From Adineta vaga (taxonomy: Eukaryota; Animalia; Rotifera), in contig CP075497.1 in the NCBI GenBank assembly GCA_021613535.1, positions 10,912,001-10,976,000 on the forward strand: DNA of 64,000 bases. The letters run 5' to 3'. Under the pieces are notes generated by a model. It saw nothing but the letters and a program-made list of their open reading frames with translations. It was not told the DNA's origin and did no database searches. Made by a program: the position numbers and the translations under genes. Of this stretch, positions 27,634 to 30,600 are shown in pieces (the first letter of the stretch is position 1; each line of letters starts with the position of its first letter).

Positions 27634-30600
27634 ATGCCTGAACGACCATTCGATAATGATGGTAAACAACAAAACACAGAACAGTCTAACAATGATCTTG
27701 ATGAAAATTCACCAACAAATAAAAATGAACAGTCTGGTGATGAAGAAGATTACGATGAAAATCGAAACGAAGTAGCAGATGATCAAGAAGTAAGATAGAT
27801 GATGATCGAAAAATTTCGAAATTTCACTTTTTCTCTATTATTTTAGGACGATGATGATGATGAACCAACACCTGATTTTACCGATGATGATTATGGAGCA
27901 ATTTTCCCGATGATGGTAGAAATTTCTAACTTCTTGTTTTGTGTAAAAATTATATTTCGCTTTGATTTTATGTAGTTCTTTGTCCTGAATTGATGGCTGA
28001 ACGTCCACAGGAACATGAAAGTCTCAATAATATAATTGTTGTTGATAATTTACCCAAAGTTGATCCAGCAAAATTGGAAAAATTAAAAGTCGTTATTTCC
28101 AAAGTTTATAGTAAATTTGGAGTATGTCGAAATGAATACTATCCATTGGATGATGAAGGAAAAACGAAAGGGTAAAGAAATGATAATATTAATCCATATG
28201 TAATTGTTTTTATTGATTAGTTATGGATTTTTTGAATTTCAAAATGAACAGATGGCTGCAGAAGCAGTCAAACAAACGGATGGTTATCGATTAGATAAAA
28301 ATCACACTTTCTCCGTTAATTTGTTGTCTGAAGTTGAGCGGTACGAAAACTTTATCATTATAAGAAACGAAAAAATATGAAATATATTTGTATATTTTAG
28401 ATTAACACAAGTTCCACCGGAATCTGTTGAAATTGTATAATAGATACATAGATAATCTTTCTCTGTTTTTAAATAATATGTTTTTGTTTTGTCAATAGAA
28501 TAATCTTTTATCTTGGTTAACAGAATCTGATGCAGTCGATCAATTTGCTGTTCAATCGGATGATCCGAAAAAGACAACTATCTATTCCAATGCTTTATCG
28601 CAACCTATTGTTATTGAAGATAGAACTGTAAAAGATTTATTGATCGTGTACTTTGTTATCTGATGTTATTTTTCTGATTTAGAAATGGACAGAAAATAAT
28701 TTCGTTTGGTCACCAAAAGGTACTTATTTAGCATCATTTCATGAGCAAGGTATTGCTTTCTGGGGTGGCAAAGAATTTCGTCAAGTACAAAGGTACGTGT
28801 CATGTTATTACGAAATTATTCTCTTAACATTGCTGTAAATGTTATCAGAGAATGAATAGGAAAACAATGTGAAACGACAAATAATATGATTATTGTTATT
28901 CGTATAGATTTGCTCATCGTGGTGTGAATTATATTGACTTTTCACCATGCGAACGTTATTTAGTCACATTAGCACCACGACCAGGTAATCCTGATGCATT
29001 CATCGTTTGGGATGTTATTACTGGTCTAAAGAAACGTTCATTTCCAATTGATCAACATCTCCCACAAGGTCCATCTTATTTCAAGTAAATTTTATTTGTT
29101 AATTAAAATCTATAAAACAAAGAATGATGAAAAGAAAAGGCCGAGTTAAATGCATATTCTTCAATGAGTATGCCATGACATAACTGGCGAAGCGATTAAC
29201 TGACTTTGTTTTTTTTATCTATAATCTTCTTTTGAGACATAATTTACCATAAATTTTCTCATAGATGGTCATTTCAAGATCAATATTTTGCTAAACAAGG
29301 TCCTGATGGTATCTATATGTATGATACGGAAGTAAAGATTTCTGTGAATAAACAAAAATGAGATATTGAATACTTTCGTATATGATAGAGCTTCCAATTG
29401 GTCGACAAGAAACCATTTAGAATTCCATCACTTGCTGATTTTCAATGGTCACCCACGGATAATCGTATTGCCTATTGGACAGCTGAAGATGGCAATGTTC
29501 CAGCACGTTTAGTACTTGCAGAAGTCAACGGTCTTAAATTGGAAGAAATTCGATCGAAAGTATGATGTTGAAATTTCCGTTTTTTTTCTAATTTATTTTT
29601 TTTATTTTCATAGACTCTATTCAATGTTATCGATTGTAAATTAGCCTGGCAAAAACGTGGTGATTATCTTGTTGTTAAAGTCGATCGATATACGAAAAAG
29701 AGCGGTGAAAAAACTAATATAAAATATTCAGTAAATCAATTGAATTTTCTATATGTAATGATTAATTGGGAAAAAATTTTAGGGTTTAATTTATAATTTC
29801 GAAATCTTTCATATGCGTGAAAGAAATGTTCCCCTGGATACATTGGAAGTAAAAGGTATAAATTAGTAATCTGATTGAAATGAAAGATATACACATAATA
29901 TGATATCGTTTTTTTCAGAAACAGTCCAATCGTTCGCTATTGAACCAGTTGGCCATAAATTAGTTGTCATTACAGGTGAAGGTATACGAACGAATGTGAC
30001 ATTCTATAAAATGGGTCAAGGACAAAGAAGTGGAAAAATTGAAACACTCAAAGTTATGGCTCAACCAGTAACTACAGCTTATTGGGCTCCGAATGGTCAA
30101 TATGTAGTTTTAGCTGCGATGAAAACTGGGTAGATCATCAATAAATCTTTCTTCATTATCAAATTTACTTTCCTATCATTAATATCGTTTAGTTCATCGT
30201 CAACTGCTGGAGTATTAATATTCGTTGACGCTAATGATATGTCTATAATGACTAAACAAGAACATCCTGATCTGTCTGATATAGAATGGGATCCCACAGG
30301 ACGTTATGTAGCATCATCTGTCAACTTATGGAATGCTAAGGTAGATTTCTTTACTCAAATTTACAATTGAACAAACGATCTAATTATTCCAAACCTTCTA
30401 TTAGCGTGATCATTCATTTAAAATTTGGACATTCCAAGGTAACTTGGTATTTGAAAAGACTGTTGAACGATTGGTCGTATTTCATTGGCGTCCACGACCA
30501 GCATCATTGCTGTCAGAAGAAACAATCAAAGTACGTCGAATAATGGATTTTGCTTCTTGTTTTTTGACTAATGATTTGATAATATGTAGGAAGTTCGTCG

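What the first reader, a model, noticed from the sequence alone, without database searches (positions are those of the whole stretch)
29114..29212. Intronic box C/D RNA whose two guides tile U2 snRNA nt 1-18, including the cap-proximal nucleotide
Seen: a 180-nt EIF3B intron, about three times the local norm, contains a 9-bp terminal stem, C box ATGATGA, D box CTGA, an internal hairpin (GCATATTC/GAGTATGC) and a degenerate C'. Guide 1 is AAAAGGCCGAG (29135-45) and guide 2 is GAAGCGAT (29189-96). Known: the conserved metazoan U2 5' end is AUCGCUUCUCGGCCUUUUGG, so guide 1 pairs with U2 nt 8-18 and guide 2 with nt 1-8. Inference from the +5 rule: guide 1 with a degenerate D' (TTAA) targets G12, or G11 if the box is shifted by one; both are 2'-O-methylated in vertebrate U2. 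Guide 2 with the canonical D box targets U2 position 2, the cap2 position normally attributed to the protein enzyme CMTR2. This would be either RNA-guided cap-proximal methylation or a clamp that holds the U2 5' end open.
Basis: partly seen in the sequence, partly recalled or inferred. Interest (0 to 1): 0.85.

Follow-up and report, generated by a model that had tools for sequence, protein, structure and literature searches.

The report
Rotifer SNORD89-like U2 methylation guide
An intron of the rotifer eIF3B gene carries the counterpart of vertebrate SNORD89, a small RNA known to guide methylation of U2 spliceosomal RNA at G12/G11; its second U2-matching stretch is conserved across animal lineages and most likely just helps binding, not cap methylation.

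Summary
A 180-nt spliced eIF3B intron holds a box C/D RNA (29114-29212). It has a 9-bp terminal stem, C and D boxes, an internal hairpin and two antisense stretches that tile the genome's own U2 snRNA: nt 8-19 and nt 1-8.

This is not a new kind of RNA. It is the rotifer counterpart of SNORD89, the best Rfam hit at 28 bits, below the 41-bit gathering score. The D' guide of SNORD89 was shown experimentally in vertebrates to direct U2 Gm12, and also Gm11.

Seven further distinct versions lie in the same eIF3B intron of related metagenomic rotifers. Boxes and both antisense stretches are invariant in all of them. SNORD89-like RNAs from other, unidentified animals and from a vertebrate keep GAAGCGA(U) as well, but 8-12 nt from box D rather than 3. 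The conserved feature is therefore an accessory base-pairing element of the van Nues type, not a D-box methylation guide.

The genome also encodes an apparently intact CMTR2, the usual cap2 enzyme. The cap2 reading stays possible only as a rotifer-specific extra (about 0.1), because the +5 register is fixed in all rotifer copies. Expression of the small RNA could not be shown with the runs available.

Verdict: new member of a known family, moderate interest.

The parts
29085..29264 (+). Host intron of the eIF3B gene (180 nt, GT..AG)
   Evidence: Sequence. An exact 180-nt skip in RNA-run contigs. Flanking exons match eIF3B and the orthologous exons of 9 metagenomic loci.
29114..29212 (+). Box C/D RNA, SNORD89-like, including the terminal stem. 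Mature ends not determined.
   Evidence: Rfam RF00578 is the best hit, full length, 28 bits, E=0.0011. The fold has z=-3.0. Conserved in 7 further distinct orthologous sequences.
29114..29122 (+). 5' half of the 9-bp terminal stem (AAAACAAAG)
   Evidence: Pairs with 29204-29212. Seven bp are invariant, and the outermost pair changes A-U to G-U or U-A in relatives.
29124..29130 (+). C box (AUGAUGA)
   Evidence: Sequence. Invariant in all homologues.
29134..29145 (+). D' guide GAAAAGGCCGAG, 12 bp with native U2 nt 8-19. D' +5 falls on G12.
   Evidence: Native U2 sequence. Duplex energy -21.5 kcal/mol. Identical core to the vertebrate SNORD89 guide, which was validated experimentally in PMC6984369 and PMC11863803.
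29146..29149 (+). Degenerate D' box (UUAA)
   Evidence: Same position as UUGC in vertebrate SNORD89 (PMC11863803). It reads UUUU or GUUU in other lineages.
29152..29173 (+). Internal hairpin between D' and C' (GCAUAUUC / GAGUAUGC, 6-nt loop)
   Evidence: Folding. Two pairs show compensatory changes in relatives, and length and sequence vary.
29173..29178 (+). Degenerate C' box (CCAUGA)
   Evidence: Aligned with C' CGAUGA/CCAUGA of the Rfam consensus and of the relatives.
29189..29196 (+). Second antisense element GAAGCGAU, 8 bp with U2 nt 1-8. Best read as an accessory guide. It occupies box D positions +4 to +11.
   Evidence: Exact complement of the native U2 5' end. Invariant in rotifer-like sequences. 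Present in the other lineages and in vertebrate SNORD89 at other distances from box D.
29200..29203 (+). D box (CUGA)
   Evidence: Sequence. Invariant.
29204..29212 (+). 3' half of the terminal stem (CUUUGUUUU)
   Evidence: Pairs with 29114-29122.

Best explanation
This is the bdelloid-rotifer orthologue, or functional equivalent, of vertebrate SNORD89, an intron-encoded box C/D guide (scaRNA-type) for U2 snRNA.

After splicing of the eIF3B pre-mRNA, the RNA is trimmed out of the 180-nt intron and assembled with the box C/D proteins; this step is inferred. Its D' guide (29134-45) opens U2 stem-loop I and pairs with U2 nt 8-19. That places G12, and with the degenerate D' box possibly also G11, at the fibrillarin site for 2'-O-methylation.

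The second element (29189-96) pairs with U2 nt 1-8, immediately 5' of the main duplex and overlapping it by one nucleotide (C8). It acts as an accessory guide that stabilises and extends the interaction, and it does not select a methylation site of its own.

Shown here: the sequence anatomy, the complementarity to the native U2, conservation in orthologous introns, splicing of the intron, and similarity to SNORD89. Inferred: that the small RNA is expressed, that methylation occurs, and that the second element plays a helper role.
For: 1. Rfam. SNORD89 is the top family over its full length, and the alignment puts C box, AAAAGGCCGA, C' and AGCGA in register. The same model scores 101.7 bits on a vertebrate-type contig with the same layout.

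2. Experiments in the literature. SNORD89 guides U2 Gm12 in a yeast assay (PMC6984369). Knock-down lowers both Gm11 and Gm12, through a D' guide with the degenerate D' box UUGC (PMC11863803).

3. Native target. U2 nt 1-19 is complementary to the two elements, and a cofold forms both duplexes at once.

4. Orthologous introns. Nine metagenomic loci (7 distinct sequences) carry the RNA in the same eIF3B intron. Host exon identity to the window is 60-92%. Boxes and both elements are invariant, while the hairpin, positions +2/+3 and the intron flanks vary.

5. Other lineages. SNORD89-like RNAs hosted in an ABCF2-like gene, a further type (L045) and the vertebrate type all keep GAAGCGA(U). Its distance from box D is 8-12 nt in these and 3 nt in rotifers. 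Its distance from C' is steadier: 10, 11, 12 and 18 nt.

6. Fit to accessory guides. This matches the 'extra base-pairing' described by van Nues et al. 2011 (PMC3116282, section 8): such elements sit in the unused second guide region, are 4-11 bp long, and often overlap the main duplex by 1-2 nt.

7. Cap2 enzyme. A CMTR2 orthologue is present and open over residues 70-682 of the 683-residue Adineta steineri CMTR2. CMTr2 methylates nt 2 of U1 and U2 in vitro (cited in PMC9479742).

8. No competing rRNA target. The best 28S duplex of spacer 2 (-18.5 kcal/mol) is matched by 42% of shuffles, and spacer 1 pairs far better with U2 than with rDNA.
Against: - The Rfam score (28 bits) is below the SNORD89 gathering score (41). 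The non-rotifer invertebrate sequences did not reach E = 0.5. Part of the similarity is forced by the shared target, so common descent is likely but not proven.
- No read or contig covers the small RNA in the four runs laid, which look poly(A)/cDNA-type. A stable RNA is therefore not shown.
- No modification data exist for rotifer U2.
- In rotifers the accessory element sits exactly in methylation register next to a canonical box D, and that spacing is fixed in all 8 distinct sequences. Accessory guides are normally not adjacent to a D box (PMC3116282).
- The metagenome pattern required GAAGCGA, so SNORD89-like RNAs that lack it could not have been found.
Confidence: 0.75

Rival explanations
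1. Dual guide. In rotifers the second element together with the canonical C/D motif directs fibrillarin to the ribose of U2 nt 2 (the cap2 position), in addition to D'-guided Gm12. This would be redundant with, or replace, CMTR2 on U2.
For: - Box D +5 pairs with U2 nt 2, and nt 1 and nt 3 are also paired.
- The register GAAGCGAU-NN-A-CUGA is fixed in 8 distinct sequences whose host exons are down to 60% identical.
- Positions +2/+3 vary freely, as expected where the target has already ended.
- Both duplexes can form on one U2 molecule.
- Um2 of U2 is required for splicing in human extracts (Donmez et al. 2004, cited in PMC7960923).
Against: - The same element lies 8-12 nt from box D in the other lineages and in vertebrates, so the conserved function cannot be D-guided methylation.
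- An apparently intact CMTR2 is encoded.
- The duplex is only 8 bp, the target is the second pair from the helix end, and it lies next to a cap. I found no precedent for this.
- All rotifer-like sequences may be fairly close relatives, so a fixed spacing is weak evidence.
Confidence: 0.1
2. Modification-independent chaperone or clamp. The two elements together hold U2 nt 1-19 single-stranded. This could keep stem-loop I open or mask the U2/U6 helix II region during snRNP maturation, with methylation being secondary.
For: - Nineteen contiguous U2 nucleotides are covered, and cofolding releases about -40 kcal/mol.
- G11/G12 lie in the 5' strand of stem-loop I.
- Chimeric eCLIP suggests that some snoRNA-target contacts act independently of modification (PMC11863803).
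Against: - Vertebrate SNORD89 demonstrably affects Gm11/Gm12 (PMC11863803, PMC6984369).
- The intact C/D and C'/D' architecture is the one used for methylation.
- Nothing here separates this reading from a helper role in methylation.
Confidence: 0.08
3. The D-side spacer guides methylation of 28S rRNA rather than pairing with U2.
For: Spacer 2 can form a 13-bp helix (3 of them G-U) plus 5 further pairs with a 28S site. The energy is -18.5 kcal/mol and +5 falls on a U.
Against: - 42% of shuffled spacers do as well on the same rDNA.
- The pairing needs positions +3, U7 and G9 of the spacer, which change in relatives.
- The invariant core is exactly the U2 complement.
Confidence: 0.02
4. A decaying or unexpressed relic in a long intron.
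For: No contig covers it in the four RNA runs examined.
Against: - Boxes, stem and guides are invariant across orthologous introns whose flanks and hairpin have diverged, and the stem pairs show compensatory changes.
- The runs laid are not suited to small non-polyadenylated RNAs.
Confidence: 0.03

Closest known systems
SNORD89 (HBII-289; Rfam RF00578), the vertebrate box C/D guide for U2 Gm12/Gm11
   Same: - Same order of parts: C box, AAAAGGCCGA guide, degenerate U-rich D', hairpin, C' (C-N-AUGA-CA), spacer containing GAAGCGA, box D, terminal stem.
- Same target region of U2 and same predicted site, G12.
- Intronic location.
   Different: - The score is below the Rfam gathering threshold (28 against 41 bits).
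- The host gene is eIF3B; another invertebrate-type lineage uses an ABCF2-like host.
- The guide is extended to 12 bp, matching the C at nt 19 of rotifer U2.
- The element reads GAAGCGAU (8 bp, reaching U2 nt 1) instead of GAAGCGAA.
- It sits 3 nt from box D instead of 8, so that it falls into methylation register.
- Shorter hairpin.
Accessory guides ('extra base-pairing') of box C/D snoRNAs (van Nues et al. 2011, PMC3116282; van Nues and Watkins 2017, PMC5389607)
   Same: - A conserved element complementary to the sequence directly flanking the methylation site.
- It lies in the otherwise unused second guide region.
- It is 8 bp long and overlaps the main duplex by one nucleotide.
   Different: - Those cases concern rRNA targets; here the target is an snRNA and the pairing runs to its very first nucleotide.
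- In rotifers the element is adjacent to box D, which was seen in only one of the yeast cases (snR69).
- A stimulating effect was not tested here.
CMTR2 (cap2 2'-O-methyltransferase)
   Different: It is a protein-only, cap-dependent enzyme. It is present in this genome (L069), which removes the need for an RNA-guided route.

Membership tests
Box C/D snoRNA/scaRNA | C box RUGAUGA near the 5' end and D box CUGA near the 3' end, brought together by a terminal stem | tested here: met
   AUGAUGA at 29124-30, CUGA at 29200-03, and a 9-bp stem. All are invariant in relatives, and the outer stem pair covaries.
Box C/D snoRNA/scaRNA | Internal C'/D' motif with a guide upstream of D' | tested here: met
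   The boxes are degenerate: UUAA (D') and CCAUGA (C'). They stand at the positions of the SNORD89 D' and C' boxes. Degenerate D' boxes can be functional (PMC3116282, PMC11863803).
Box C/D snoRNA/scaRNA | Exists as a stable small RNA bound by fibrillarin, Nop56, Nop58 and Snu13 | tested here: inconclusive
   Four RNA runs were laid. The intron is spliced out, but no contig covers the snoRNA, and the libraries are unsuited to small RNAs. Protein binding cannot be tested here.
SNORD89 (RF00578) | Covariance-model score at or above the gathering score (41 bits) | tested here: not met
   28 bits, E=0.0011 in the local search and 0.1 genome-wide. It is nevertheless the best family and matches over the full length. 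A vertebrate-type contig scores 101.7 bits.
SNORD89 (RF00578) | D' guide AAAAGGCCGA complementary to U2 nt 9-18, with G12 at +5 | tested here: met
   The guide is identical to the Rfam consensus and to the published human primer sequence (PMC11863803).
SNORD89 (RF00578) | Conserved GAAGCGA in the spacer between C' and D | tested here: met
   The Rfam consensus shows AGCG as conserved. It is present in the window at 29189-95 and in all homologues found. Those homologues were selected with that motif, so they are not independent evidence on this point.
SNORD89 (RF00578) | Directs 2'-O-methylation of U2 G12 (and G11) | not testable with these tools
   This needs RiboMeth-seq or primer extension on rotifer U2, or the heterologous yeast assay of PMC6984369.
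Accessory guide (extra base-pairing) | Conserved element complementary to the sequence immediately flanking the methylation-guide duplex | tested here: met
   It pairs with U2 nt 1-8, abutting the nt 8-19 duplex, and is conserved in four sequence groups.
Accessory guide (extra base-pairing) | Not placed in methylation register next to a D or D' box | tested here: not met
   In the window and all rotifer-like sequences the element occupies +4 to +11 of box D. The feature is met in the other groups, where the gap is 8-12 nt. One yeast exception, snR69, is on record (PMC3116282).
Accessory guide (extra base-pairing) | Stimulates methylation at the main site | not testable with these tools
   This needs a mutational assay.

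The most novel reading that the evidence does not exclude
In bdelloid rotifers the ancient accessory element of SNORD89 has been drawn up against box D, so that one snoRNP methylates two sites on one U2 molecule: G12 through D', and the cap-adjacent nucleotide U2 (cap2) through D. This would be the first RNA-guided cap-proximal 2'-O-methylation, acting alongside or instead of CMTR2 on U2.
Probability: 0.1. Interest if true: 0.8.

Novelty: new member of a known kind. Interest (0 to 1): 0.38.

Why it matters
- **Reach of the family.** SNORD89 was assigned to U2 Gm12 only in 2019 and to Gm11/Gm12 in 2025, and is documented in vertebrates. This finding extends it to rotifers and to at least two further non-vertebrate sequence types. 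The U2 Gm12 guide would then be old in animals and would move between host genes (eIF3B, an ABCF2-like gene).
- **A conserved second contact.** The comparison exposes a second conserved contact with the first 7-8 nucleotides of U2. Neither of the two papers that assign SNORD89 to U2 uses the terms for such a contact (term searches). If it works as an accessory guide, it would explain how a guide with a very degenerate D' box can invade U2 stem-loop I. It also gives a simple element to mutate when testing what Gm11/Gm12 do in splicing.
- **A natural experiment.** The rotifer-specific placement of that element in exact box D register shows what happens when an accessory guide lands in methylation position at the very 5' end of a capped RNA.

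Tried and rejected
- **Rfam at gathering threshold over the whole window:** nothing. Only the permissive local search showed SNORD89.
- **Second copy in the genome:** none found by covariance model, BLAST or pattern. The one extra pattern hit, L011, lies inside a coding sequence and is chance. eIF3B is also single-copy, so there is no paralogous intron to compare.
- **Expression:** four RNA runs were laid. They gave clean splicing evidence but no coverage of the small RNA, so expression is undecided.
- **rRNA as an alternative target:** the SSU and LSU models could not be run (errors). I located the rDNA through 5.8S after several busy replies (then 75) and fetched one unit. The best 28S duplex is at chance level, so this reading is rejected.
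- **CMTR2:** the ESM Atlas look-up gave no usable hit. The representative search plus cluster names identified it.
- **FtsJ-domain hits that are not CMTR2:** L071 is a general SAM methyltransferase, L072 looks like an arginine methyltransferase by eye, and L064, L068 and L070 are CMTR1-like.
- **About half of the 47 metagenome pattern hits** are bacterial coding sequences with no box D or terminal stem. They were discarded.
- **Taxon of the non-rotifer groups:** not established. Their contigs carry no marker that I could name.
- **Literature:** the papers retrieved for SNORD89 with 'invertebrate' and for 'rotifer' with 'snoRNA' did not look relevant by title and abstract and were not read further. 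The Drosophila scaRNA paper checked has none of the U2 G11/G12 search terms. The library is incomplete, so this is not proof of absence.
- **Spliced models:** exons were always searched singly by reference.
- **Vertebrate-type contigs (L030, L036):** each differs by one base from both published human SNORD89 primer sequences, so I did not take them for human. L030 was included whole in one Rfam scan. Beyond that, I read only the snoRNA stretch of both contigs and did not pursue them further.
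Full report
**Observation**

The window sequence shows a GT..AG intron at 29085-29264 (180 nt). It lies inside a gene whose exons match eIF3B. One exon hits the eIF2A/eIF3B propeller domain in Pfam and eIF3 subunit B chains in the PDB at E about 1e-11. 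Contigs from an RNA run of the same species skip exactly these 180 nt, and the next intron is 57 nt. The intron is therefore real and about three times the local size.

Inside the intron lies a textbook box C/D RNA:
- stem AAAACAAAG 29114-22 pairing with CTTTGTTTT 29204-12
- C box AUGAUGA 29124-30
- D box CUGA 29200-03
- hairpin 29152-59 pairing with 29166-73
- degenerate D' UUAA 29146-49
- degenerate C' CCAUGA 29173-78

The RNA folds better than all 200 shuffles (z = -3.0).

**The target**

The genome is 100.8 Mb in 6 pieces. Earlier notes of this scan call it Adineta vaga. My best CMTR2 hit, to Adineta steineri, is consistent with a bdelloid. The genome has 19 U2 genes, and they begin AUCGCUUCUCGGCCUUUUC.

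Guide 2 is complementary to U2 nt 1-8. The two duplexes share C8. A cofold of the RNA with U2 nt 1-20 forms both duplexes at once. G11 and G12 lie in the 5' strand of U2 stem-loop I, so the guide has to open that stem.

Chance does not explain this. Of 20,000 shuffles of the intron, 60 gave a U2 complement of 11 nt or more and 20 gave the 8-mer.

**What it is**

No Rfam family reaches its gathering score in the window. A permissive search of the intron gives SNORD89 (RF00578) as the best family, over its full length: 28 bits, E = 0.0011, gathering score 41. The alignment puts C box, AAAAGGCCGA, the C' box, AGCGA and box D in register.

SNORD89 is no longer an orphan. It was assigned to U2 Gm12 and confirmed in a yeast assay (PMC6984369). 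Knock-down in mouse cells lowered both Gm11 and Gm12; the interaction uses a D' guide whose D' box is the degenerate UUGC (PMC11863803). The review PMC7960923 lists it as the Gm12 guide.

**Relatives**

The RNA and its host gene are both single-copy in this genome. One scan of metagenome contigs, with the pattern C box + AAAAGGCCGA + GAAGCGA, gave 47 loci. About half are bacterial coding sequences and were discarded. The real box C/D RNAs fall into four groups.

- **Group A** (nine loci, seven distinct sequences). These lie in the same eIF3B intron. The flanking exons are 60-92% identical in protein to the window's, and the introns start and end at the same exon positions.
  - Invariant across the eight distinct sequences: the inner seven stem pairs, C box, GAAAAGGCCGAG, UUAAA, the C' region, CGAAGCGAU, the A before box D, and CUGA.
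  - Variable: the hairpin (length and sequence, with two compensatory pairs and a covarying outer stem pair), the three bases after the C box, two bases of the D-side spacer, positions +2/+3 of box D, and the intron flanks.
  - This is the pattern expected of a working guide RNA.
- **Group B** (nine loci, eight distinct sequences). These sit in an ABCF2-like gene of an unidentified organism.
- **L045.** This locus carries two tandem copies.
- **L030/L036.** These are vertebrate-type and score 101.7 bits on the SNORD89 model.

**The second element**

All groups keep GAAGCGA. All non-vertebrate sequences also keep the next U, which pairs with U2 A1 and was not part of the search pattern.

| Group | Element to box D (nt) | C' to element (nt) |
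|---|---|---|
| Rotifer-like (A) | 3 | 10 |
| Group B | 8 or 12 | 11 |
| L045 | 11 | 18 |
| Vertebrate type | 8 | 12 |

(Distances.)

With a gap of 8-12 nt, box D +5 lies beyond the 5' end of U2, so the conserved role of the element cannot be D-guided methylation.

It does fit the 'extra base-pairing' described for many yeast and human box C/D RNAs. Those are conserved 4-11-bp complements to the sequence flanking the methylation site. They are typically placed in the second guide region when only one guide is used, often overlap the main duplex by one or two nucleotides, and stimulate methylation up to five-fold (PMC3116282, abstract and section 8).

Term searches of the two papers that assign SNORD89 to U2 found no wording for such an element.

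One caution applies. My pattern required GAAGCGA, so I cannot say how many SNORD89-like RNAs lack it. The Rfam consensus, built independently, does show AGCG as conserved.

**The cap2 idea**

Three things speak for it, in rotifers only:
- The register GAAGCGAU-NN-A-CUGA is fixed in all eight distinct sequences.
- Positions +2/+3 are free to vary, as expected where the target has ended.
- Box D is canonical.

Several things speak against it:
- The comparative picture above.
- The duplex is short (8 bp) and the target pair lies next to the helix end and the cap.
- I found no precedent for snoRNP methylation next to a cap.
- The usual enzyme is present. An FtsJ-domain scan of the genome led to a locus (L069, piece C1 at about 8.398 Mb). 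Its exons align, without breaks, to residues 70-682 of a 683-residue Adineta steineri protein named cap-specific methyltransferase 2, and more weakly to CMTR2 of insects, nemerteans, echinoderms and hemichordates. CMTr2 is reported to methylate nt 2 of U1 and U2 (PMC9479742), and its loss removes cap2 from U1 (PMC12592727).

I put the dual-guide reading at about 0.1.

**Other readings**

A 28S site pairs with the D-side spacer at -18.5 kcal/mol, but 42% of shuffled spacers do as well, and the pairs it needs are not conserved in relatives. A relic or unexpressed element is unlikely given the conservation pattern. A pure chaperone role cannot be separated from a helper role with these data.

**What is not shown**

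No run examined contains the small RNA itself. The four runs laid cover only the exons. Nothing is known about modifications of rotifer U2. Orthology with SNORD89 rests on shared architecture and motifs, with a sub-threshold model score. The organisms behind groups B and L045 are unknown.

**Verdict**

The RNA is a new, non-vertebrate member (or equivalent) of the SNORD89 family of U2 Gm12/Gm11 guides. Its second antisense stretch is best explained as a deeply conserved accessory guide to the U2 5' end. RNA-guided cap2 methylation is a minority possibility confined to rotifers.

Noticed in passing
The other groups have A or U there. This is possible guide-target co-variation.
   Followed up: partly
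L045:294-409 and L045:1150-1265: An unidentified metagenomic eukaryote carries two tandem SNORD89-like copies about 860 nt apart. The second has AAAGGCCGAG, one A fewer, and the same GAAGCGAUUUU element.
   Followed up: partly
L050:4216-4497, L019:3235-3486 (minus strand): In the second invertebrate-type group the SNORD89-like RNA lies in an ABCF2-like (ABC-F ATPase) gene, not in eIF3B. The guide has therefore moved between host genes.
   Followed up: partly
G000 piece C2: 13.793 Mb (L070); 15.040 and 15.050-15.053 Mb (L068, L067, L064): Besides a CMTR1-like gene with G-patch and FtsJ motifs (L070), there are further CMTR1-like methyltransferase copies within about 12 kb of each other. One ORF combines a G-patch-like stretch with a CMTR1-like stretch.
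   Followed up: partly
G000 pieces C5 10.91-10.93 Mb, C6 4.52-4.53 Mb, C2 8.685 Mb, C3 19.05-19.06 Mb: The U2 snRNA genes occur in small clusters in both orientations. Several lower-scoring copies on C3 and C4 may be variants or pseudogenes.
   Followed up: no
G000 piece C1 5.39-5.58 Mb and C4 2.63-3.12 Mb: rDNA arrays lie on two pieces with a unit of about 10.4 kb. Some spacings are irregular (11-19 kb), suggesting insertions in some units.
   Followed up: no
L075/L076 (rDNA, sense position about 5966 of the merged unit): A 28S stretch GAAUCGUUUUGCUACGGUAUG can pair with the D-side spacer of the snoRNA, with +5 on a U. By shuffling this is at chance level.
   Followed up: yes
L011:1490-1520: The only other genomic match to C box + AAAGGCCGA lies inside a long open reading frame and has no D box or stem. 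It is a chance match.
   Followed up: yes
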